A stretch of 59,615 nucleotides of DNA, counting the filler, from Bipalium vagum (Eukaryota), in the NCBI GenBank assembly GCA_037834085.1. It is 3 parts of 3 records of this genome, joined end to end, with 100 filler letters (N's around TTAATTAATTAA, not from the genome) between each part and the next. Parts side by side here need not be neighbours in the genome. Positions count along the whole stretch, not along the records: positions 38,075 to 59,615 come from JBBMKC010235921.1; 2 more parts are not named here. The stretch is one strand, 5' to 3'. Shown piece by piece: positions 38,075 through 59,539 of this stretch. The position numbers were made by a program, and so were the translations under genes. The first letter of the stretch is position 1. Each line of letters starts with the position of its first letter. The notes under the pieces are model-generated. The model was not told the DNA's origin, searched no databases, and saw only the letters and a list, made by a program, of their open reading frames with translations.

Positions 38075-38142
<68 letters not shown>
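38075..38142. repeat. (ATT)n microsatellite after a gap
   Basis: att tandem run. Confidence 0.95.
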
Positions 38143-38143
<1 letters not shown>

Positions 38144-39799
38144 AATTATTTTGATTACTTCTATATCGAATCTTTCACTATAATCAATGAAATGGAAAAG
38201 AAATCCTTAGTATTTGACTTTGCTTACTAAGAATGATTTCAAATTTACTGATGGATTTTATTGAAATAATCTAATTTCATCATTAAGTCTGATTAATAAA
38301 ACTAAATCTCTTCAATAAATAAATTCTCCACAAATAAATATAGAATTAATTTAACGAAATTTATTTTCTTTTCATTTTCTTTATATGAATTATGCTAGCT
38401 TTTGTATCAATATGAATTATGTCCATATTTTGTTACTTTGAAATAGAAAAGAGAATTTTTGAGGTTTGGATTTTTAGCCTGGATTTTATTTAACAAAAAA
38501 ATTTCCAAACCTTTAGATGAAAAATGCATAAAATAATTATATTGATCGTCAAACAATATGTGGTCAACGCTTGAATATATCTCATTATTATTATATTATC
38601 TCTTTATATATTTATTAGTTTATTACAAGATTTATTTATAGTATATTACTTATTATATCATATTATTTATTATATAAATATTATCTATATTTCGATTGCA
38701 ACAAAAATTTCTAAGAGAATTTTTAAACTGTGCTCTTCAATCTTCTGTTCATTATGAATTTTGTAAATGTTTAACACAATGCAAAACAGGTTTATTTAAA
38801 TAAAGTTATTATAATTTAATTAAATGAAACAATAGTAATCAATTATGTACACATTTGTCTTTACGTTCTTTCTTTAACATTCCTGTTTTCATTGCATTAT
38901 CCAGTTGTATATAGTCTATATTTTATATTTCTTTGATTTGAGACATTTTTTGATCATTGACAAGAACTTTAAAATTTGATAATGATCCCGTTTGTTATAC
39001 CATTAATCATGAAAAGTTAACAATAACGAAAAAAATTATCTTCGATTTAATTTTAATTTGTTCTTTAACTAAATGTCTGTAAAATCTGTTTTTTCTTTTA
39101 TTACCGCAGATTAAAAATTTATTGATAGTTCTTTTTTTATTGATAAAAATGTTAAACATTCAGTAATAAATATGATTGAAATAAAAACAGTGTTGTTGTA
39201 ATTAATGATTATCAATTGTTGATCAATGTGAATTTTTATTGTTTTCACAAGATGATAATGCAACAATGATCTACTGATAAACAATTATAACTAATTTTGT
39301 GTAGCAGTGAGAAATCTGTTAACAAAATTAGATTAAACTAAGAATTTTTTCAATTTATGAAAAATTGAAATTTATATACAATTGGTTTTTTTATCAAGAA
39401 ATTGTGAGAATAAATTTTTTATTATTTTTGAACTGGATATGGGTTTAATTTAAATATTAAATCTTATTTTCATAGATTAGAGTTTAAAAGTGATAATCAC
39501 AGTTAATTTGATTTCACAAAAGTCACTAATATTATTGATGTAAGTTTTAATAAATATATTTAAATAAATGCTTGTCAATTTGGATTATAGAATAAGTAAG
39601 AGTTATTGGATCAAATATTTTTTAATCGGGACATTTCTTATTTAACGCTAATCTGTTATTTTCTCTCAGTTTCCTCTTTGAATATTGCACATCAGACTGG
39701 TAATCGAATGTTTTAGAAAGGTGATTATTGAATCAAACGTATTTTCATTTAATTTTATTAATAATTACTAGTTTGTTTCCATTTTCCTCTATTGAAATA

Positions 39800-42541: not shown

Positions 42542-43702
42542 TTAAGTTTTAACAACATTTTTCATGATTTTATTATTTTATGATTTTGTTTTAAGATATT
42601 TATATTAATATCAAATACATTTGTTTGAAAGATCTTTTTCTGCTCTACAGAAGAAGAGTGAAGTTTTATGTCATTTCATTTTATTTAAATTTAACAGTTT
42701 TGAAATGCAGTACCAAGTTGATCAAAAACACCATTTCTCGCACCTATTACCATTTTATTTTAATCGAGGTTTTATAGTTACAGGAGCGGAACAAGAAATT
42801 TGTAATGTATATGGAAAACATTTTTTATTCTGGACTACTGCAAAATGTTGGTTCGAGAAATTTGAATCTTCAATTCAACCTTCAAGAAATCTCACATACT
42901 GATTGGTCATCTAATTTCTATCATGACCGTCATAGAGGACGGCTGTCAAACAGCCAGAGATTAAACAGCAATCCATTGACAGTCTTAGGCCACCAAAACT
43001 CAAAAACGTGGTAATTGTGTGAAATATCGGTAGAATAAAAAACCAAAGAAAGGGTTTTAAGAATTGAATTGATAAATTGCCAGATATCAAGCCACAATAA
43101 ACGGTTTTTGATCGAATTATCAATGGGATGAGAAATGGTGCTTTTAAACAAACTTGAAGCGCAGAAAAACGTTGTTGGAGTCCTGCTTGCACAGTAACGC
43201 TCAGAATTGAATAAGATTAGCATCCCAATAAAACCATGATCTCTGTTTTGTAGAATTGGGCGAGAAATGACCCAGAAATCAAACAGTCGACAAGAACCTG
43301 ATAATGAATCAATTGTGTCGAGTATAAATGAAAATATGACAAATGAAAGACAAGACCCAAAGTCATTCTTCTCCATGATAACACAAAACAGCATACAACA
43401 AATATCATCAAAACTACCCTCAAATCTCTCGATTCTGAGGTTCTTCAACACTTTCCATATGCTTCGACAAGACATTACTATCTTTTCCGCTCTCTGTTAA
43501 ATCATATGAAAGGAATTACTTTTGAGAAGGAAATAAACTAGTTGACCACTTTCTAGAATAAAGGTTTCGATAATCTGGTGGACAGATGGGAGATCCTAAA
43601 TAATTATATTAATGATTGATTTTCCATTATTTTTTTCAAAAAGTTTTATCTCTTATAAATATATATTATTCAAAATCACGAAAAATTATGTTAAAAACAT
43701 AA
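42542..43702 (+). mobile_element. Near full-length decayed mariner (about 1.16 kb)
   Basis: Imperfect TIRs ttaagttttaacaacatttttcatgatttt / aaaatcacgaaaaattatgttaaaaacataa; MQYQVDQKHHFSHLL..FNRG, ICNVYG..WFEKF and LVDRWE motifs. Confidence 0.85.
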
Positions 43703-46700
43703 TATTATAAATGGAAAATAATTTCATTATTCTCAATAATGATGAAATTTTAACAATTTTTAGAATCAAAAAATAAGTCAGATTTCAATTTTTTTTTAAA
43801 AAAAATTTAACTTATTTCGCAAAAAAATAAATGTTGAAATTATTACTGAAGGTTTCTAATAGTTTACGCGGAGTCTTGTTTGACAAATTCTTTTAACTAA
43901 ATTTTCCAGAATATCAGGTAGGTGTAGCAGAAAACAATATTTTAAATCGAAGTTACATATTTTTCATAAAGTTCACCTGTCAATCATAGCGAAGGGATCA
44001 TAAATCGATTTTAATTTCGTCAATATTGCTTAATGGGCATCGGTTCAATTATTTTTGAAAGTTAATTATGAGATGATGAGAAATCTTTTATGTCCTACGA
44101 GAGATAGATCAATTAAATGTGATTATAGATTATAAAGATCATTTTTAGTAAGATTTTCTGTCATTTTTGGGGGAAACTTACTTGACTGTCAATTTCTTTA
44201 ATTTAAAATTCTTTTAAAAAAATTAAAAATTAGTGATTTTAATTTACCTAATTAATATCGATTAAAACGAAAAATTGAGGTAAAAATTGTTAAATTTTTT
44301 CTAATAACAAAGAACCAAAATCAATTGTTACGGATTTTTATCATCTAATGAAGTTTTTATTGTCCATTGTCAGTGCTGTTATCATTGAAATCACACAATG
44401 TAAATAATGTTATTTATTGATGAAAGTCAGTCTATCAAAATAATGGTTTCTCTGTAGTATAAAACGTCACCACATAATTCTATCATCCTTTGTTTTCAAT
44501 TTTTGTTGTTATTAAAGAGTTTTGAATTTATCCAATTTAAATTTTATTTTTAAATATTTTTTTAAAAAAATTAATCATGGAATTTAATTAGAAAAATAAC
44601 TTTATTATCTTTATCATCAGATTTATAAAATAATGAAACTTTTCTGCTTGAAACGATATTATTATTGATCAGACATTAAGTTTTAATTAAAGAAACTGAA
44701 TATAATTATAATATAATTAATGTGTGAATACAAAACGTTTTCGTATTTATTTTTCACATTTTTGGTCTTTAGTTTTGTCTGTTATGTTAAATTACAATAA
44801 GAATTTTTTTATTATAAAATATTTTTTACTGATATGGATTATTTTACGTTACTGATTTATATTTTATTGAATTTTAAAATTTTTTTTATTTCATTAATTA
44901 TCATTTTTCTTATTCTATTTACTCAAACAATCATGTAAGTATATTTTCATTTCTAGAATTCACTTAACAGTTCAAAACTATACTAAGCTATAGATATGAA
45001 AAAATATTTTATTAGTAACATTAAAATAATAAATTAAATAAATATCTCTTGATCAATCAATCTTTAATCTTTCATTTTTATTTGTTTGTTTTTTCTGTCA
45101 ATAGCATAAAAAATATTAATAATATTATGACTATTCACGCCCTGTGTCTGGTGCTCAATTTTGTAAAATGTCACGCCTTAGAATTTGAGTAATACTTTAT
45201 TATTTGTTTTTCTGATCTTTGAAATTGATAAATTGAAATATATAAATTATGGATTTTATAACACAATTTAAATCGATAATCAATATATTAAAATATTTTT
45301 GATTTATCTAATCCCAGTAGTATTTCTATAATTTGTTTTTTATTGATTTCTTTATTTTTATGAAACTATTTTATAAAAGTTATAATAGATTTTAGAAGAA
45401 TAGCAACGTTACATAAATTGTTTGGAAAATATTATTTTTACCTAGTAAAACAGAAACCGTCAGTCGATAATTATAGTCGATTTTCTTAAAGAAATTTTAA
45501 GAATTAATTAATCTGATGATTTTAAAACTGTAAAAAGAATTTTTGGTTTGATACTTTTATTTTTCTATTTCTCCTTTTTCTTATTATCATATACGATTAA
45601 ATTTTTCGATCTTTCTGATAATTGATTTCTTAATTTTATAAAATTTTTAAATTTTATTTGAAATATAATAGACTTGATAATTATTTTTCATGATAAAAAT
45701 TTTAAACATATATGTAAAAAATTGGCATCTGCTAGAATTTTAGTAGAAAACGATTCATAACTAACATGTATAATCAGCCAGAGAGATAAAATCACACCAG
45801 CTTGTTAAAATCGAAGAAATTATGATGAAAATATTTGGCTCTGTTTAATAATAAATTTATTTTGAAAAATCGTTAGACAAGTAGATCCTTTTTACGAAAT
45901 CATATCTGCTTAATGCCTACAGTGTCAACGAGTGTGAACAATATTTTCAATAAATGGTTAAAGTAAAGATCACTTTACATTAGTAAATTTGTTCACTGAT
46001 TCAGGAAAGATGAATGGGCTTTGACTTTGACCATAGTGGGCTTAAGTATTTAATATTTTGTTTAACGTAAGTTAATAAATTCTCATTGTCAGAAGTAATC
46101 TAATAAACTGTTGTTAAAAGTGCCTTTGTTCATAGTTAAGTTATTTTGTAGAATTTATACCTCTTTATTGTAAAAGGCTGATAAGTGTTCGAATTTTTTG
46201 ATAATGAGAATGAAATTTAATAAAAGCTGAATATTATCATAATAAATGATGCAATGATGAGCAAAAATATAATAAATTTATAATACTTTCAAGTGCATTG
46301 TTTCCTTTAATAAACTTTCAATTTAAGTTTTACAAAAAAATAGACTGATAAAATATTATAACAGTGCTATAAAAAAAATCCTGACATTTTTATATGAAAA
46401 ATATTTTGTCAGAGATGATTTCGTAAAATATGTCAAAAGTCGGTAATTAAAGTATTTTCCCCAGAAATAAATATGCGCTTTTTGTTTAATTTGAAGATTT
46501 TTAATTCCATCGATATTTTTCAGATTTATATAATATATTATATACGGGAATTTATTGTAAATTAACTTAAAATAAAAAACCTGTTTAATGTTAAAATTAA
46601 GTTTGAAATTTTTTTGACTTTAACAATATATAATAATATTAATATTAATATTAATAATCATAATAATAAAAATAAAACATTTTTGTTCGACCAAATTACT

Positions 46701-49399: not shown

Positions 49400-49930
49400 A
49401 TTTTAAAAATTAGTTTTTTTTTAAAATTTCATCCATGCTTTTTAAATAATTTAAAAATTTCCCAGGTTTGAATAACCTCCTCATACCCCCGTTCTCAAAA
49501 ATTTTTTAATTTTCTGTACATTTCTCTCAAATTTCTTTCCGTTTGGCTTTTCTAACACATATCTTTGATCATGGACTTTAAGGACGATCTCATATGATTC
49601 TTCATATATGGTCTTTCATTTTCTTTTGCTCGAGCTTCGGCCTTCACTAGCACCTTTTTCCTACGGAAAATGTCCTCTTTGTATTATATTTGATTTTCGA
49701 AATCTATTTTTCAGCTGCCTTATATATTTTGTGTCTTTAGATCTTTCTACCAAACACCATTTTAGCCGGACTTATTCCGATTGTTTTCTGTAGCGTAGAA
49801 TTGAGAGGAAATTCCACTTCCTGCAGGATCTCGGCCCAGTTGCTTGTTCCTCTTTCTCTTAAAGTTGCGTTCAAAAAATAGCACACAGTTCTGAATTTTC
49901 TTTCTATTTGACCATTTGTGTTGTGCTTAT
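49400..49930 (-). mobile_element. Ty3/gypsy integrase 3' end, PPT and start of 3' LTR
   Basis: NGQIERKFRT..W..L..VEF.LNST...G.SP..MVFG integrase motif; gagaacggggg PPT-like tract at 49486-49496 followed by TG. LTR extent is uncertain. Confidence 0.8.
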
Positions 49931-49934
49931 TTTT

Positions 49935-50293
49935 CCACAACCCTCTGCATCACTGAGATCAAATTTTCCAAGACGGAATTTGTCCAACCACCAACGGGTA
50001 GTTGATTCTGCTACATAACCATCTCCTAAAGGTCTGTTTATATTTCTGGTTGCATCTGCCGCAAAATTTCCAAGTTTAAATTCGTAGATATTTAATATTG
50101 CTCTAATTTGCTGGTTTGTTAACATTTTTAAAAATGTGCCAAAATATGCTTTAATTTAAAGCAGTAAAAAGCAGTATGAATCCTAAGCATCAATTTGGAA
50201 TATCATATGATGCCATTCATACGTATTTTATATAAAATAAAATCATCGAAAGTTGCCTTGTATAAAACGCTAATTTATTTTCGAACAACCTAA
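49935..50293 (-). mobile_element. Mariner 5' end with left TIR
   Basis: TA-ttaggttgttcgaaaataaatt TIR; YEFKLG..AADATRNIN...RWWLDKFRLGKFDLSD. Confidence 0.85.
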
Positions 50294-50859: not shown

Positions 50860-51740
50860 AAATCTGTTCAAAGGATTGGAAGTGCTGTTTGGATAAGTGT
50901 GTCATCTATCAAAACAGATGATTATCTGTAGGGTCACAGTCATGTGAATAACCCGCATTGGGTATTACTTAACATCTAAGGATTGCTAACATTTCCCAAA
51001 CTGGTTTTTTAGCATGTGACTAGACATTGTCATGCGAAAAGGAGTTTATGTTGTCTTTTGTCAAACTCTGGTAGTTTTTGGCTCAATTTCCGGTTCATGC
51101 ATTACTTTCGTTTCCATTATTACAGATCACCGGTACCCGTTTGTCCATGTTGTATAATCTCGGATGAATCACATCTTTATGGTTCCACCAATCCATGACC
51201 AAGCTTTCTTTCTGTTGAAATTCCTCTTTTAAGATGTTCTAGATGTCTCGCCGGAGTTGCAAATTGTTTTTCTTCGTTTAGGGTTATGAAAATAAACCAA
51301 TGTTTCATCACTCGTTACAATTACAAGAAAATTTTTTTTCTTTTTCCAGCAATCAAAATTTCACAATTGGTTTTATATTTTTCGAGGTCTCGTATATCCA
51401 TCCTCCTTTCCTGTAGATCTTCTCTATTGTTGTTAAACGTCGGCTAAGTGATGGTCGACAAACATCTAATGATTTTGCAAGTTCAAGTTGAGTTTGACAT
51501 GAATCCTAATACACTAATGCTTTCAGATTTTCATCATCAAACCATTTCTTTTGTCCGAGAGGTTCTTTATTTTCACACTTAAATCCCCCTTCCTGAAATG
51601 TTCGAACAATCTTTTACAAGTTGGTAAAGATGAAACATTGTCTTCATAAAGCTTAATAAGTATTATGGGAGTTTCGGTAGCCGATTTTCTTAATATTGAG
51701 ATGAAGCACCATCACTTCTCACAAATGGTGTTTATTTGGT
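50860..51740 (-). mobile_element. Decayed mariner transposase
   Basis: FDDENLKALV..DSCQTQLELAKSL, HDNV.SH and YSHDCDPTDNHLF motifs. Confidence 0.8.
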
Positions 51741-52548: not shown

Positions 52549-53100
52549 TAGTGGTCCAATTTTATTATGCGTCCTAATCACAAAACTTTAAAAAATAAAT
52601 TTTATTATTATCATACAAACATTAAATGATTAAATATTCTCTCTCAGTGTTAACTACTCTCTGCCATCTATCTACCAAAGAATGAATGTCATTGGAATAA
52701 AATTCAGTAGTTTTTTTTATCAAAAATTGTTTAAAGTCATTTTTTATGTCGTCCAAATTTTCATAATTTTTTCCTTTAAAATTGTGACTTATCGAGTGAA
52801 ACAGATGAAAATCCGTAGCCGCGATGTCTGAGCTATATTGTGGATGTAGCAATACTTCATAACACGATTCTCTTAATTTCTTTTGTGTCATTTATGATGC
52901 ATGGAATTTATCATTATCATGCTGAAGAATAACTCCTTTGCTGCTAACCAAACTGGGTCTTTTTTTTGAAGCGCCCAATGTAAACTGTCTAATTTTTGGC
53001 AGTAACGTTCAAAGTCAATAGTATCGTGAGGCCTCTTAAGCTTTGGTGCCTTGATCATAATCATACAACAAACATAACCTGGTGTGAGTATTTGTAATAC
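52549..53100 (-). mobile_element. Mariner 3' half
   Basis: VILQHDN..., LLHPQYSSDIAATDFHLF, LVDRWQRVV..EY in ORF 52622..52891. Confidence 0.9.
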
Positions 53101-55845
53101 TTTTTGCCATTAGAGTTTCAAAAAGAAATATTAAATTATTATCTACATTTAAATGTGATGCATAAATGGTATTATTAAAAGAATTTCAAATAGATTTAAA
53201 TTGATTTTATTAAATTAAAACGTTTAAGTTTTGCAATATAAAAATCTAGGTTAAATTGGATCCATAATATATACTGTATATTGTACAAAGTTAGTTTTTA
53301 TGGATTTGCACAGGTCTTAATAGATTTGACTTTGTGAGGATAATTAGACATTTCTGATATTTTTACCAATATATCAATATTAAGAAGTTTTTTTAATTTG
53401 ATCGTATTCACCAATAATATTTAATATTTCACAATTGAATTTTGCAGATTTTTTAAATAGTGAAATAAAAGTCTATAAAGCAACTTTGATCTTTCTTTTA
53501 TTTTGAGATCTTTTTATGAAATGAGACGACGAATAAGTCAGAAAATATGAATGAGAGAAAACAATTAAAATTGTCAAATTATTAAGAAAGAAATACTTAT
53601 TTTTACGAACATTTACGGATTGGAATAAAAATTTTTAAAATTTCATTCTCCCGTGAACTTTGAAAAACCTTAACATAATACATGTAAATTTGATATTGGT
53701 TCAGAAACAATTTTTCAAAAGCGATTCAGTGAAAATTTTCTCTGATAAAAAAACCTTTGATATTTATGTGACTTAATTAGTACTGTTGATCTCCTAAGTT
53801 GATCAGAATGTAAAATTAAATTCATTGAAATATCTTGACTTTTATCTTCTAGCATACCACAAATGTTTGCCGTCACTGTCTATTTTAAATGAGACAGTCG
53901 ATTTTGATCAAATCGTCAGATTTAGGTATTGAAATTATGTTAAATCTAAGAAATTATAGAACTTTGGGAGTTCTTTTGTTGACTTTTTAAAACAAATGAA
54001 AATTATTGATTTAAGAGTTTTATTCATTAAAAGATAAATTACATTTTAAAATCTTTGTTCTATCTAAAAAGTTAATTCTTGACAAGCTGTATTTAAAAAA
54101 AACTCATTCGTTATGTACCGTAACTCGTTAAATTGAAAAGATCATGTGTAAAGGGACTGAAGTTTAAAATATGGAAAAAAAGACTTTAGTTAAATATTCT
54201 TTTTCTTTTCAACTCAAGGTCTTTCTCGAATAATAGGTGAAATAAAATTCTACCTTTGCGTATTTCTTTTATTATTCAAGCATATATTTTAGAATAAATC
54301 AATAATAGGTAGGGTTTTGAAATGTCAGTACATAGGCACAACATTCTGAGACAATTTCGTGACATTGCAGTCAGATTTTTGAAACGTAGGAGGACAAAAG
54401 AAATAAATTCTTGGGTATTTGAAACTATTTTTCTTTTATTAATTATTGATTGTTTGAATAGTATTAATTGCATTATAAAATCAACATTAGTGTTGTCGAC
54501 CCATAATTAATATTCGATTTTTTCGCCTTTTATGGTGTTAATTTCCTAACTTCAACAAAACCTATCTCTATTTATCTTTGTATTGTTAATCAATTAAAAA
54601 GAAAAGAATAAATAAACCCAATATTCAATTTTATGTGAAAATTAATTGATTTGTTTTTTATACTACTTTGATTGACAGAAAAATTGACTTTAATTATTAA
54701 TAAATAATAATAAATTTTTTTTAAAAGTCAATAAAGATGAAATTTCTGTTTACATTATGAAATCCACTGAAATAGGGAATAAATAATTTAGTATAAATTG
54801 GATTGAACTGTCGAATATTAAAATATCAACTATTTACATTTAATGTAAGTATGCTTCTCGAAATATAGTTTTATCATTTTAATTTCTCTGAAAGAAAATT
54901 TAATATTTTCACAATTTTAAATAGTTTCGAATTTAAGCAAAATAAATAAGCATTTTATTGTTAGGTAATCAGTATCATTATTTTTACAGCATTCTATATT
55001 CCTCTAGCCAGATTATTAAGATCATCATTTTAATATAACCAAACAAATGATTGTAGTGATTTTGTGAATTTCTGGATGAATTCAGTTGTCATAAATATAG
55101 GAATTAATGAAAAACATTAATTATTTGAATCAGGAATGTATTACATAAGTTTTTAAGATTGTGGAAACAGCAGTTTCAAGTTTCCGGATCAGAGATTTGT
55201 CAATCATTATTTTCGTGACAAAAAATATCACGCCATTTAAAAGCATCTGAAAATGAAGTGAAACTGAATTGTAGCAATAATAATTAATTATTATATATAT
55301 TTATGCTTTTTATAAATAAATAAAACAAATTTAACTTCTAATTCATAACTGTTAAAACCCCTTTATTCCTGCGATCCTCATGATATCTATTTTCCATTTC
55401 TAGAATTTTAGCTTCGTGTGAGATGTCATGTATATTTAATAAGATTTTTGGTGCATCGGAACTTTTAAAAGTATTTGTCCATTATCTATACTCCTTTCTT
55501 TCTGACATTTCTGAACGAGAATTACACTAAAAAAGTCAAAGAAATTCTAAATCAGAACAAAAATATACCTTTTGTTTCATTACACTTGAAAACAATGAAA
55601 TACTTGTTCCAAATATCACTATATTATGCATTAATTAAGATATTTAATTTTAAATGTTTTCTCAAGGTTTTGTGGCAAAGTATATTTAAATTATTTATTT
55701 TTAAAATATTTGTTAACTTTGTACTGTTACGCTTGTTTAAAATTTAATGCTATTTTATCAAATGTGAGTGTTAATTACTTTAAATGAGTTACTGATTTTT
55801 AATTTTACTTTAGATTTTGCAGAATTTTTATCATTTTATTTTTAG

Positions 55846-55906: not shown

Positions 55907-56916
55907 ACAACTGCTCAATGTATAAAATAATAGTATTTTTATTTTAATACACCAGAAATCCATTATTTATAATGTATTGTGATTAATTGTGATATATTTA
56001 TACATATAAGTAATATTTAATAATTTTTTCAAATTCTCAGAAAAAATTATATTTTAAAATAATACTTATGAAAAATTTTGTTTTCAATAAAGATTGTATT
56101 ATAATAATTATGATATTCATTAAATTATAAAAATATGTAGAGTTCTCGGGTCATATTTGTATTTTCAGCTTGTTTTATATTTTATTCAATTAGATTATGT
56201 CATTTTTTGAAAAATGCATTTGTAGTCATTTGATAATTGTAAGATAACTTTAGCTTATTAATAAAAATATACTTATGAAATGATCATTTACCGCAGCTTG
56301 ATATATAAATATCATTTTTAAATAAAATAATTCACAATTTTGCTTTAAATTAAAAATGTTATTTCAATTCTTTCAGCAACATGTTTTATAATTTGTTTTT
56401 AGACGATTTTTAGACAAAAAATGTATTTATTGTTTAAAGATCACTAAAATAAGCAATAGCCATTGATATTTTAAGGTCTACATTTTATTTTTAAAAAATA
56501 AGAAATTATGCCGGCTTGTGTATTTTTAGACTTAAAATGTTTTCAGTAGTTGATATATCATGAAAATATAAGTTTGTCAAAATATTGACAGTGTAATACA
56601 AAATTATGTTGACACAATTAGCTATATTTTTAACAAGAATTAAAATTTTGCGAAAACAAAAGGTTAATAACAGCAACAAAGGACTTTAATCAACAATATT
56701 CAAAAAGCCTGTAAACGCTTTTGAAAATTCTTAACAATCCCCTATTGATATTTTGTTCCATTCTGTCAATAAGGATTCTTCGGTGAAGTTAAACTTTTTT
56801 GGTTGTCTCTTGTCTCTAAAATACACCAAACACTGGAATCCACAAGGTTAAGATCCAGGGACTATGGAGGCTCTTCAGTTGAAGAGATAAAATTCTTCTT
56901 GTAGGACTGCTATATT

Positions 56917-57186
56917 GACCTGGTGTGGTCGCCATGTTAGTTGAAAATTAATCGGAGATACCGGGACTCGAACCCGGGAACTTCACATGCGCATAAACTG
57001 CTATGACTGCTAAGCTACATCCCCCGACTAATTTTCAATTTATTTCACACCCCCCTCCTTTAAAGCTCACAACCATATCCTTAACCGCCCGAGTCTCTTA
57101 ATTCCATTTCCTTTCGTTTTACTTTTCCTTTACACTTTTGAGACCTCATCCGCTGGTTGGTGTCCTGGTGTGGTCACGATGTTAGT
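56917..57186 (-). mobile_element. tRNA-containing TRIM (Helenus/Cassandra-type non-autonomous LTR retrotransposon)
   Basis: Minus strand: ACTAACA + PBS (57162-57179) + internal + PPT AAAGGAGGGGGG (57050-57061) + 115-bp TGT...ACA LTR (56935-57049) + PBS TGGCGACCACACCAGG (56919-56934). Confidence 0.85.
56954..57024 (-). pseudogene. tRNA-Ala(CGC)-like sequence inside the LTR
   Basis: GGGGATG/TATCTCC acceptor with G3:U70, A-box-like TAGCTTAGCAG, B box GGTTCGAGTCC, perfect T-stem; anticodon arm degenerate. Confidence 0.8.
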
Positions 57187-58598
57187 GGTTGCTAAAAAAT
57201 CATTACATTCCATAAAAATTTATTAATTCAAACCGTTTTCTGTTTTGTTCAATTTTCTATTAATACAAAGGAAATTTTAATACTTTTAACATATAAAATT
57301 TTCGCATTTAATTCGAATATATTGAGCTTTAAAATTTATACTTGTTTTTATTAAAAATGTAATTTATACTTTATTTAATTTTAAATTATTAAAATCTATT
57401 AGCTCAATGTACTGCAAATTAAATATGTTACTCAGATATTTTTAAATTCTCACATTGAGGATCAATTAATTTTTTAACTTCAGGTTCCTATAACCTTTTT
57501 CTTTTGTTTATATTTCACACGCTAAGTATGATGGTGAAATAAATTGTTTTCTTTATCAAGGACCTTTGAGCGTAAGAGCCAGAGAATTTTTCTTTAAAAA
57601 ATTCCCCAATAATTTTGAAAATATCCATCACGGACGATACTCACGGTTTTGTAAAAATAATATCATTTTATTCAAAATATACTTTGTAAACTTAAATCTT
57701 TATCTCAGTGATTTTAAATAAAAGCAACTTTCATCGTTAAGTTCTAAATGCATCACTCCACATATTTTACAAAATTTTTAGGAACTTAACAATATTAAAT
57801 ATGTTATATCGAACAAATAAAGAATGTAAGAATACGATTACTCTTTTTTATATAAAGATATTTTTAAAATGATGTGATGTATTTCATTAATGTCAACGTA
57901 ATTTTCTGTAACCCTGTATTACTTTATAAGAAATTTTCTAAGTTTTTCTATTTCATTTTTATAAATAAAAAAATATTTATGATCAATAATATTTTATAAA
58001 AATTTAATCGATAATGAAAATTAGATAATTTTTAACAAATCAAATTCATTTTAATTTGAAATTCGTATTGATATCTAAAATTTGAATTATTGGCTTTCAT
58101 AATAATTTTTTCTAAGGCAGAAGGAAATGAATTTACTAAAATCCCTTTTCGTGAAACTTTAGTTAAGCCGCTTATGTGCAAAGTAAATTTTATTTTTATT
58201 ATATTACTAATATTATTTTACCTTTTACTCTTATTTTCACAAACTCTACAGATTAAAAGAAAGAAAATTGATACTTTAACCAATAATGAAAACTGGAAAA
58301 AGTAAATTAATAATTCTGGAGTTACAAAAATTAATGAGTAAAATGATCAAAAAATATTTTCAGACAAAGAAATAAAAATAATGAATTCTTGATTTATCTT
58401 TTGACTTAAGTGATAAGGAACTTTGAATATGAAAACCAGCTCATGATTACATATGCGAAAAAAACATCTACTAATTGTAAAACATTTTTTGAAGAAATTT
58501 AACTTATCTGAAGTTGGTAAAAATAGTCAAAATTAGATAGACGTAAAATCGAAAGTTTTAATGAAAGCAAGGTTTTGAAATATGCGTTATATCATCAT

Positions 58599-58713
58599 TG
58601 TGAGATCAATTGAAAATTAGTCAGGGGATGTATCACAGCGATCAGAGCAGTGCATACGCATGTGAAGGTCTCGGGTTCGAATCCCGGTATCTCCGATTAA
58701 TTTTCAACTAACA
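58599..58713 (+). mobile_element. Solo LTR of the tRNA-containing TRIM
   Basis: 115 bp, TGT...ACA, aligns without gaps to 56935-57049 with about 15 mismatches by hand count; tRNA-Ala-like core 58624-58694 with B box GGTTCGAATCC. Confidence 0.85.
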
Positions 58714-59539
58714 ACAAATTAAGATTGATTCACAATTAAAATATGATTGTATTCGAATTGGTCTAGCGGTTAGTGCAGTTGCAATGATGATAGGCATTGT
58801 ACATTTGTTGTTGGTTTATTAATTTATATTACTGCTGCAACAGTAGTAATATAGTTTGACGCCAATCACTTTATATTAGTAGGAATGTTACAAATTATTT
58901 GTAAAATTTTCATAATAAGTCGATTTATTAATTAATATACCTAGTTGAATTGTTAGGGGATAAAATGGTAATTAATGAAGAATTGAATAAGCTAAAATAA
59001 TTAAAAAATACTATAAAAAGTGAACGAGAAGATAAAATTAATTAAATTTTTGTTATGAATGAATTGAAAAGTGAAACTAAAAATGAATATTTAACCAATA
59101 TAAGAAAAGTAACTTGACGACTAAATAACTATTTGATATGATTAATACAAATACATTTTAGGTTAATGAAATATGAGTTAGAGTAGTTTAACTAGCTCAA
59201 CAAAAAGACTGCAAGTAATTATTTAAATGGAGTCTGAATTCTAGATTTGGTTTAATTATGTATTTTTGAACAAGAATCGAATGATATAATTTTATAATGT
59301 TCACAAACCCTTAAGCTGCTTCAAAGTTTTTTTCTATGTCTATAATATTGTGAATTAAAGAAATATTTTGGGGGATTCAATCTACACTTTTCATTTCCCT
59401 ACTACTATTAATAATATTTTTTTCATATTCTTATATTTTTGTTTTTTCACATTTCTTCTTTCATATTTATTTTTACTGATTTAGAATAATATAAACATGT
59501 TAATTCTTGTCTCTCTTCCTAAATATTTCTTTCATAATA

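What the first reader, a model, noticed from the sequence alone, without database searches (positions are those of the whole stretch)
56917..57186. Miniature LTR retrotransposon whose LTR is built around a tRNA-Ala Pol III gene
Seen: on the minus strand a polypurine tract (AAAGGAGGGGGG) directly abuts TGT; a 115-bp unit ending AACA follows and contains a tRNA-Ala-like sequence (A/B boxes, G3:U70); it is followed at once by TGGCGACCACACCAGG. The 130-bp non-coding internal region has no T4 run on the sense strand. Knowledge: a PBS starting TGG pairs with a tRNA CCA end, and this one fits tRNA-Arg-like 3' ends (...GGTCGCCA). Cassandra TRIMs carry 5S rRNA in their LTRs, and tRNA-carrying TRIMs have been described under the name Helenus. 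Inference: a Pol III-driven, SINE-like LTR parasite that uses one tRNA as promoter and another as primer. It may be an undescribed family in this lineage.
Basis: partly seen in the sequence, partly recalled or inferred. Interest (0 to 1): 0.9.

Follow-up and report, generated by a model that had tools for sequence, protein, structure and literature searches.

The report
tRNA-bearing miniature LTR retrotransposon (Helenus type)
This is a decayed copy, plus a nearby lone LTR, of a very abundant miniature LTR retrotransposon whose 115-bp LTR is built around a tRNA-Ala-like sequence; it is a new family of the kind described in 2024 as Helenus, not a new kind of element.

Summary
On the minus strand a 12-nt polypurine tract (57061-57050) abuts a 115-nt TG...CA unit (57049-56935). 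The unit contains a tRNA-Ala-like core (Rfam tRNA 38.4 bits) and is followed at once by a 16-nt primer-binding site that starts TGG (56934-56919).

New facts:
- A second copy of the unit lies at 58599-58713 on the plus strand, 87% identical, with no PPT or PBS beside it.
- A second, mutated PBS lies at 57179-57164, preceded by only the last 7 nt of an LTR. The locus is therefore about 1.1 units of an LTR-PBS-internal-PPT period of 245 bp, not an intact two-LTR element.
- Contigs of a public DNA run of the same organism show a highly repeated family. More than 100 contigs end exactly at each LTR edge with unrelated flanks, and some join LTR-PBS-internal.
- The single T4 run of the LTR sits 8 nt after the tRNA-like end, so Pol III would have to read through it.
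- A 13-bp leader/trailer helix extends the acceptor stem.

The structure fits Helenus/TRIMp3 (Kojima 2024). No string tested matched the published consensus sequences, so I file it as a new family. Pol III drive, target-site duplications, the host tRNA-Arg, the autonomous partner and the organism remain untested.

The parts
57180..57186 (-). Last 7 nt (ACTAACA) of an upstream LTR. This is all that is left of a 5' LTR at this locus.
   Evidence: It is part of the 26-nt direct repeat 57161-57186 / 56916-56941, 88% identical (D3). A suffix alignment shows nothing significant beyond 7 nt.
57164..57179 (-). PBS copy 1, TCGTGACCACACCAGG, with 2 mismatches to PBS copy 2.
   Evidence: Most other copies in run X1 carry the letters of PBS copy 2 at those two places (table 3, 57176 and 57178).
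57062..57163 (-). Non-coding, purine-rich internal region (69% purine over the whole 130-nt PBS-to-PPT stretch), without TTTT.
   Evidence: It is repeated in the genome, with summed contig depth about 11,000 against 25-60 in unique flanks. Shorter internal variants are seen as joints.
57050..57061 (-). Polypurine tract AAAGGAGGGGGG, directly upstream of the LTR.
56935..57049 (-). Full 115-nt LTR, TGTG...AACA. LTR positions 1-11 are the 5' end, 12-24 the leader arm, 25-96 the tRNA-Ala-like core, 97-109 the trailer arm (holding the only TTTT, at 103-106), and 110-115 the 3' end.
   Evidence: In one search, 120 contigs have loose ends at 57049.
56953..57024 (-). tRNA-Ala-like module: G3:T70, intact box B, degenerate anticodon arm. 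It is not a working tRNA gene.
   Evidence: Rfam tRNA 38.4 bits. ARAGORN gives tRNA-???. The 5' 15 nt of the family's majority form equal the Drosophila tRNA-Ala 5' end.
56919..56934 (-). PBS copy 2, TGGCGACCACACCAGG, directly after the LTR. Unrelated sequence follows it.
   Evidence: Its first 10 nt equal a PBS that a paper assigns to human tRNA-Arg.
58599..58713 (+). Second copy of the 115-nt LTR, 87% identical, with no PPT or PBS beside it. It is a solo LTR with no recognisable target-site duplication (flanks TCAT / ACAA).
   Evidence: In one search, 135 and 128 contigs have loose ends at 58713 and 58714, and summed depth is about 160,000.

Best explanation
The 115-nt unit is the LTR of a non-autonomous miniature LTR retrotransposon (TRIM). 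The model element is LTR 115 + internal 130 + LTR 115 = 360 bp, and its LTR is built around a degenerate tRNA-Ala-like sequence. That makes it a Helenus-type element (TRIMp3).

The window holds two dead relics of this abundant family.
1. 56919-57186 (minus strand) reads LTR tail, PBS, internal region, PPT, full LTR, PBS. This is about 1.1 units of a 245-bp period. It is most simply what is left of a tandem LTR-internal-LTR-internal array, or of a copy that lost its 5' LTR.
2. 58599-58713 is a solo LTR.

Inferred mechanism:
- An RNA starts in the 5' LTR and ends in the 3' LTR. It is probably made by Pol III from the A/B boxes and reads through the T4 at LTR positions 103-106.
- It is packaged in trans by an autonomous Ty3/gypsy-type element.
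- Reverse transcription is primed by the 3' end of a host tRNA-Arg on the PBS, and the plus strand is primed at the PPT.
- The DNA is integrated through its TG...CA ends.
- The 13-bp leader/trailer helix may keep the tRNA-like fold from being cut out by RNase P and RNase Z.

Shown: anatomy, repetition, sharp edges, and junctions in other copies. Inferred: everything about transcription, priming and the partner element. The confidence given is for the identification as a Helenus-type TRIM relic; for Pol III drive alone I would give about 0.4.
For: - Anatomy is in the canonical order and contact: PPT | TG...CA | TGG-PBS.
- A second LTR copy has the same 115-nt limits.
- Run X1 laid 4824 contig pieces. 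Summed depth is 84,000-160,000 on the LTR and about 11,000 on the internal region, against 25-60 in unique flanks.
- In the same run, 120, 135 and 128 contigs break off exactly at 57049, 58713 and 58714. Their flank consensus agrees only about 0.45, so the flanks are diverse and not tails.
- 'Goes back' joints 57167>56923, 57175>56933 and 57090>56919 are contigs that read LTR-PBS-internal. One 1786-nt contig covers 56935-57171.
- tRNA likeness is shown, and the tRNA-Arg-type PBS.
- No ORF over 39 aa lies in the element.
- Size and layout fall within published Helenus: LTR 104-323, full length 311-1263. Tandem arrays and an excess of solo LTRs are reported for such families, and small published LTRs also carry a T-run just after the tRNA-like part.
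- The leader/trailer helix gives fold z-scores of -3.8 and -3.3. All 15 differences between the two LTR copies avoid the leader, the trailer and the last 32 nt.
Against: - No intact two-LTR copy was read base by base, because the contigs could not be fetched.
- No target-site duplication is present at the solo LTR (TCAT vs ACAA), and none is testable at the composite locus.
- The T4 inside the LTR would stop much Pol III transcription before the PBS.
- No RNA run is available.
- The host tRNA-Arg and the autonomous partner were not seen. The PBS occurs nowhere else in the piece.
- Summed contig depth is not a copy number.
- The adjacent stretch 57181-57563 is also highly repeated and unexplained, so the element's true upstream limit at this locus is uncertain.
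Confidence: 0.77

Rival explanations
1. The composite locus is not a tandem-array remnant. It is an integrated, unfinished reverse-transcription product, or a permuted one-LTR circle. Before the second strand transfer, the DNA intermediate reads PBS-internal-PPT-LTR-PBS, which is what stands here.
For: The right-hand copy ends within 3 nt of the PBS (16 nt plus CA), close to the 18 nt that plus-strand strong-stop DNA copies from the primer tRNA. A PBS stands at both ends.
Against: Seven nt of LTR tail (ACTAACA) stand upstream of the left PBS, which the intermediate should not have. Tandem arrays are documented for Helenus LTR-11_DR and for Cassandra. This is a single locus with no population of such forms examined.
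Confidence: 0.12
2. The 115-nt unit is the LTR of a larger, possibly coding, Pol II-driven LTR retrotransposon. The 130-nt internal region seen here is only a deletion derivative, and the tRNA-like part is a passenger (an old SINE or tRNA insertion) without promoter function.
For: Contigs show several internal-region variants between PBS and PPT (tables 5 and 5c). The T4 right after the tRNA-like part argues against productive Pol III transcription. An integrase-like fragment lies in the piece at 49740-49949.
Against: The LTR has only 26 nt upstream and 17 nt downstream of the tRNA-like core, which leaves little room for a Pol II promoter and poly(A) signal. The AATAAA at LTR positions 6-11 is absent from copy 2. 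The variants seen are short (20-40 letters between). Pfam did not confirm the integrase-like piece, and it has no matching PBS nearby.
Confidence: 0.08
3. The unit is an ordinary tRNA-derived SINE (or a dispersed tRNA-Ala pseudogene family), and the PPT and PBS beside it are chance neighbours.
For: It has a tRNA-like head with A/B boxes and a T4 terminator, high copy number, and most copies occur without the internal region.
Against: The conserved unit starts 26 nt upstream of the tRNA-like 5' end with TG and ends CA. It has no tail, and its flanks are diverse right at both edges. The PBS occurs twice, each time directly after ACTAACA (0.01 expected). The PPT touches the TG end. Other copies repeat the LTR-PBS-internal junction.
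Confidence: 0.03

Closest known systems
Helenus (TRIMp3), Kojima 2024, Biology 13:119 (PMC10886601)
   Same: It is a short non-coding LTR element with TG...CA LTRs that contain a tRNA-derived sequence with A and B boxes. The PBS starts TGG directly after the LTR and the PPT lies directly before it. Solo LTRs far outnumber internal parts, and tandem arrays occur. A T-run follows the tRNA-like part in small published LTRs. The size (115/130/360) is within the published range.
   Different: No string tested (PBS start, LTR ends, acceptor 3' arm) occurs in the published consensus file. Published insect Helenus (Chalcidoidea, Cynipidae) are aligned in the paper to tRNA-Lys-CTT, have LTRs of 167-323 bp and use Lys, Leu, Trp or Arg-TCT primers. 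This one is tRNA-Ala-like, has a 115-bp LTR and uses a PBS of the GGTCGCCA (Arg) type that none of them uses. The 4-bp target-site duplication of animal Helenus is not shown here. The paper does not mention a 13-bp leader/trailer helix.
Cassandra TRIM (Kalendar et al. 2008; tandem arrays, Kalendar et al. 2020), as summarised in PMC10886601
   Same: It is a TRIM whose LTR carries a Pol III gene-derived module with promoter and terminator. Long tandem LTR-internal arrays are known.
   Different: Cassandra carries 5S rRNA rather than tRNA and is found in plants. Its Pol III transcription has experimental support, which is lacking here.
tRNA-derived SINEs (SINE2)
   Same: It has a tRNA-like head with internal Pol III promoter boxes, high copy number and no coding capacity.
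   Different: The element here has LTR-type termini, a PBS and a PPT, a conserved 26-nt stretch upstream of the tRNA-like part, and no tail. It should depend on an LTR retrotransposon, not on a LINE.

Membership tests
Helenus / TRIMp3 | LTR with TG...CA termini, repeated with sharp edges | tested here: met
   The two 115-nt copies have the same limits. In one search, 120, 135 and 128 contigs break off exactly at the edges with diverse flanks.
Helenus / TRIMp3 | tRNA-derived sequence with box A and box B inside the LTR | tested here: met
   Rfam tRNA scores 38.4 bits against a gathering score of 29, and ARAGORN also calls it. Box B is intact. Box A is imperfect in both window copies but closer to canon in most other copies (table 3).
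Helenus / TRIMp3 | PBS complementary to a tRNA, next to the 5' LTR | tested here: inconclusive
   A TGG-start 16-mer lies directly after ...CA, twice. Its first 10 nt are identical to a human tRNA-Arg PBS quoted in PMC11905727. The organism's own tRNA could not be examined.
Helenus / TRIMp3 | PPT directly upstream of the 3' LTR | tested here: met
   A 12-nt purine run touches the TG end.
Helenus / TRIMp3 | Two LTRs around a short non-coding internal part | tested here: inconclusive
   At this locus there is only one full LTR plus a 7-nt tail. In other copies, joints show LTR-PBS-internal and internal-PPT-LTR, but no whole copy was read. No ORF exceeds 39 aa.
Helenus / TRIMp3 | 4-bp target-site duplication (animal Helenus) | tested here: inconclusive
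   The one solo LTR has flanks TCAT and ACAA, so no duplication. The copy is 13% diverged and may stem from recombination between elements. No other copy's flanks were available.
Helenus / TRIMp3 | Sequence kinship with a published Helenus family (not required; the group is held to be polyphyletic) | tested here: not met
   Strings from our LTR and PBS do not occur in a comparable context in DataS1. The published PBS lists lack this PBS.
Helenus / TRIMp3 | Transcription by RNA polymerase III | not testable with these tools
   No RNA run holds the stretch. It is not validated for Helenus in the literature either.
tRNA-derived SINE (SINE2) | Element begins at the tRNA-like head and ends in an A-rich or simple-repeat tail | tested here: not met
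   There are 26 conserved nt before the head, the end is ...CTAACA, and diverse flanks begin right there.
Cassandra | 5S rRNA-derived sequence in the LTR | tested here: not met
   The Rfam scan finds tRNA and no 5S.

The most novel reading that the evidence does not exclude
This would be a Helenus-type family that arose independently, from a tRNA-Ala-like source and with a tRNA-Arg (GGTCGCCA-type) primer. It would sit in a very AT-rich animal lineage where none has been described, be amplified to thousands of LTRs, and have one of the smallest animal LTRs. Its conserved 13-bp leader/trailer clamp would shield the tRNA-like fold from RNase P/Z, so that a Pol III read-through transcript can serve as the genomic RNA.
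Probability: 0.2. Interest if true: 0.5.

Novelty: new member of a known kind. Interest (0 to 1): 0.3.

Why it matters
If the survey confirms it, this adds a family with a different tRNA source, a different primer and a much shorter LTR to the few animal TRIMp3 lineages. That would support the view that such elements arise repeatedly.

For annotation, thousands of these LTRs would be miscalled as tRNA-Ala pseudogenes or SINEs. ARAGORN and Rfam both call this one.

The T4 placed right after the tRNA-like part, together with the leader/trailer helix, gives a concrete and testable question about how a Pol III-type module can yield a full-length retroelement RNA.

Tried and rejected
- Exact-pattern scans for further copies were all blank: metagenome contigs, bacterial/archaeal genomes and viral contigs. 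This was expected for a eukaryotic repeat.
- The look-up of encoding contigs on the longest ORF of the piece was blank (the first used wrong coordinates).
- The search for homologous proteins on a mariner-like C-terminal piece was blank. The organism stays unknown.
- blastn of the LTR and the internal region against the piece found only the two LTRs and one internal region.
- I considered that 57181-57520 might be a long variant 5' LTR, because it starts TGTGAAATA and ends ACTAACA. Alignment gave nothing beyond those ends, so I dropped the idea.
- Pfam did not confirm my by-eye reading of a Tc1/mariner C-terminal remnant just downstream (56734-56861), nor of an integrase-like piece at 49740-49949.
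Only majority letters reported by read laying are described.

Full report
**Observation.** Read on the minus strand, the finding's stretch holds these parts in direct contact:
- a 12-nt polypurine tract at 57061-57050;
- a 115-nt unit that starts TGTG and ends AACA at 57049-56935;
- the 16-mer TGGCGACCACACCAGG at 56934-56919.

The unit contains a tRNA-like core. Rfam's tRNA model scores it 38.4 bits (gathering score 29, E 1e-05, 57024-56953). ARAGORN calls a tRNA of undetermined type. The acceptor arms GGGGATG / TATCTCC give G3:T70, and box B is intact. The anticodon arm does not pair, so it is not a working tRNA gene. GGGGATGTAGCTCAG, which most copies of the family carry (table 3), is the 5' end of Drosophila tRNA-Ala-AGC/TGC as given in primer tables of PMC10094720.

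The PBS pattern has 2 matches in the window against 0.01 expected. The PPT-plus-LTR-start string is unique.

- The same 115-nt unit occurs again at 58599-58713 on the plus strand. It is 87% identical over exactly 115 nt and has neither PPT nor PBS beside it.
- A second PBS with 2 mismatches lies at 57179-57164. Only the last 7 nt of an LTR (ACTAACA) precede it. The 26-nt direct repeat 57161-57186 / 56916-56941 is 88% identical, and nothing further upstream aligns to the LTR.
- The locus therefore reads LTR tail, PBS, internal region, PPT, LTR, PBS. That is about 1.1 units of a 245-bp period, not an intact LTR-internal-LTR copy.
- The LTR has one TTTT, at positions 103-106, 8 nt after the tRNA-like 3' end, as in a real tRNA gene.
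- The 130-nt internal stretch indeed lacks TTTT, but 93% of its shuffles do too, so this says little.
- The 13 nt before and the 13 nt after the tRNA-like core are complementary and extend the acceptor stem. Fold z-scores are -3.8 and -3.3 for the two copies (I14, 36).
- All 15 differences between the two LTR copies avoid this leader, this trailer and the last 32 nt.

**Evidence from the rest of the genome.** One public DNA run with coded identity holds the stretch. Its contigs were laid on 56400-59300 at 80% likeness, giving 4824 pieces.
- Summed depth is 25-60 in unique flanks, 84,000 and 160,000 on the two LTRs, and about 11,000 on the internal region. The tool warns that this is not a copy number.
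- The more robust figures are the contigs that break off exactly at 57049 (120 contigs, the LTR's TG end) and at 58713/58714 (135 and 128 contigs, its CA end). Their loose-end consensus agrees only about 0.45, so the flanks are many different AT-rich sequences and not tails.
- 'Goes back' joints (57167>56923, 57175>56933, 57090>56919 with 20 other letters between) are contigs that read a full LTR, then the PBS, then the internal region. Some carry a shorter internal variant.
- A 1786-nt contig covers 56935-57171.
- Most copies carry, at the two mutated places of PBS copy 1, the letters of PBS copy 2.

The unit is thus a mobile, highly repeated LTR. Other copies have the expected LTR-PBS-internal and internal-PPT-LTR junctions. 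I could not fetch the contigs, so no whole two-LTR copy and no target-site duplication was read.

**What it is.** It is a terminal-repeat retrotransposon in miniature whose LTR is built around a tRNA-like module. This kind was described and named Helenus, and grouped with Cassandra and Ajax as TRIMp3, by Kojima 2024 (PMC10886601).
- Published Helenus have LTRs of 104-323 bp and full lengths of 311-1263 bp. Animal families have 4-bp target-site duplications.
- Solo LTRs outnumber internal parts several-fold. Tandem arrays are reported for LTR-11_DR, and long arrays for Cassandra.
- Small published LTRs quoted also show a T-run just after the tRNA-like part.
- Our model element (115 + 130 + 115 = 360 bp) fits this range.

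It is not one of the published families. Strings from our LTR and PBS are absent from the consensus file in any comparable context. Published insect families (chalcid and cynipid wasps) are aligned in the paper to tRNA-Lys-CTT, have LTRs of 167-323 bp and use Lys, Leu, Trp or Arg-TCT primers. Our PBS shares its first 10 nt with a PBS that PMC11905727 assigns to human tRNA-Arg.

**How it most likely works (inferred).**
- An RNA begins in the 5' LTR and ends in the 3' LTR.
- It is copied inside particles of an autonomous Ty3/gypsy-type element, from a tRNA-Arg primer on the PBS and from the PPT.
- The DNA is integrated through its TG...CA ends.
- Pol III drive is plausible from the conserved boxes, but it requires read-through of the LTR's own T4. 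On that model R would be roughly the tRNA-like module and U5 only about 9 nt.
- The leader/trailer helix could hinder RNase P/Z from cutting the tRNA-like fold out of such an RNA. This is my hypothesis and is not tested.

The composite locus is best read as the remnant of a tandem LTR-internal array or of a copy that lost its 5' LTR. An integrated unfinished reverse-transcription product is a weaker rival, because 7 nt of LTR tail precede the left PBS. The copy at 58599-58713 is a solo LTR without a recognisable duplication (flanks TCAT / ACAA). At 13% divergence this is only mild evidence against the model.

**Surroundings.**
- The piece is about 24% G+C and rich in transposon debris. Mos1-type HTH_48 fragments lie at 42609-42899 (+), 49907-50155 (-) and 51526-51711 (-).
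- The stretch next to the element, 57181-57563, is also highly repeated (summed depth 12,000-68,000, peaking near 198,000 at 57529-57532). It remains unexplained.
- The organism could not be identified.

**Verdict.** I rate it a new member of a known kind, of moderate-to-low interest.

Noticed in passing
window 57181-57563: The stretch directly upstream (minus sense) of the element is itself highly repeated in run X1. Summed depth is 12,000-68,000, against about 340 from 57564 on. A roughly 35-nt hot spot at 57513-57547 reaches about 198,000. There, GTGAAATAAATTG (plus strand, identical to LTR positions 2-14) and GTGTGAAATAT (minus strand) stand head to head, perhaps the ends of related LTR families.
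   Followed up: partly
window 42609-42899 (+), 49907-50155 (-), 51526-51711 (-), 52891-53109 (-): These are broken mariner (Mos1-type) transposase fragments. The first three match Pfam HTH_48 at E 1e-09, 5e-10 and 3e-05. The fourth has a weak Transposase_1 hit. The piece is a transposon graveyard with no evident host gene.
   Followed up: partly
window 49740-49949 (-): A 70-aa open stretch resembles, by eye, the end of a retrotransposon integrase core (GQIERKFRTV...SPAKMVFGR). Pfam gave no hit, and no matching PBS or LTR is nearby.
   Followed up: partly
window 56734-56861 (-): Just downstream of PBS copy 2, two frames read like the C-terminal part of a Tc1/mariner transposase (SLDLNLVDSSVW...). 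Pfam gave no hit on the short pieces. The TRIM relic may sit in or beside an older DNA-transposon relic.
   Followed up: partly
window 38075-38150 and 46620-46680: A (TTA)n microsatellite lies at the piece's start and an AT-rich imperfect repeat at 46.6 kb. They account for most of the long 'inverted repeat' calls.
   Followed up: no
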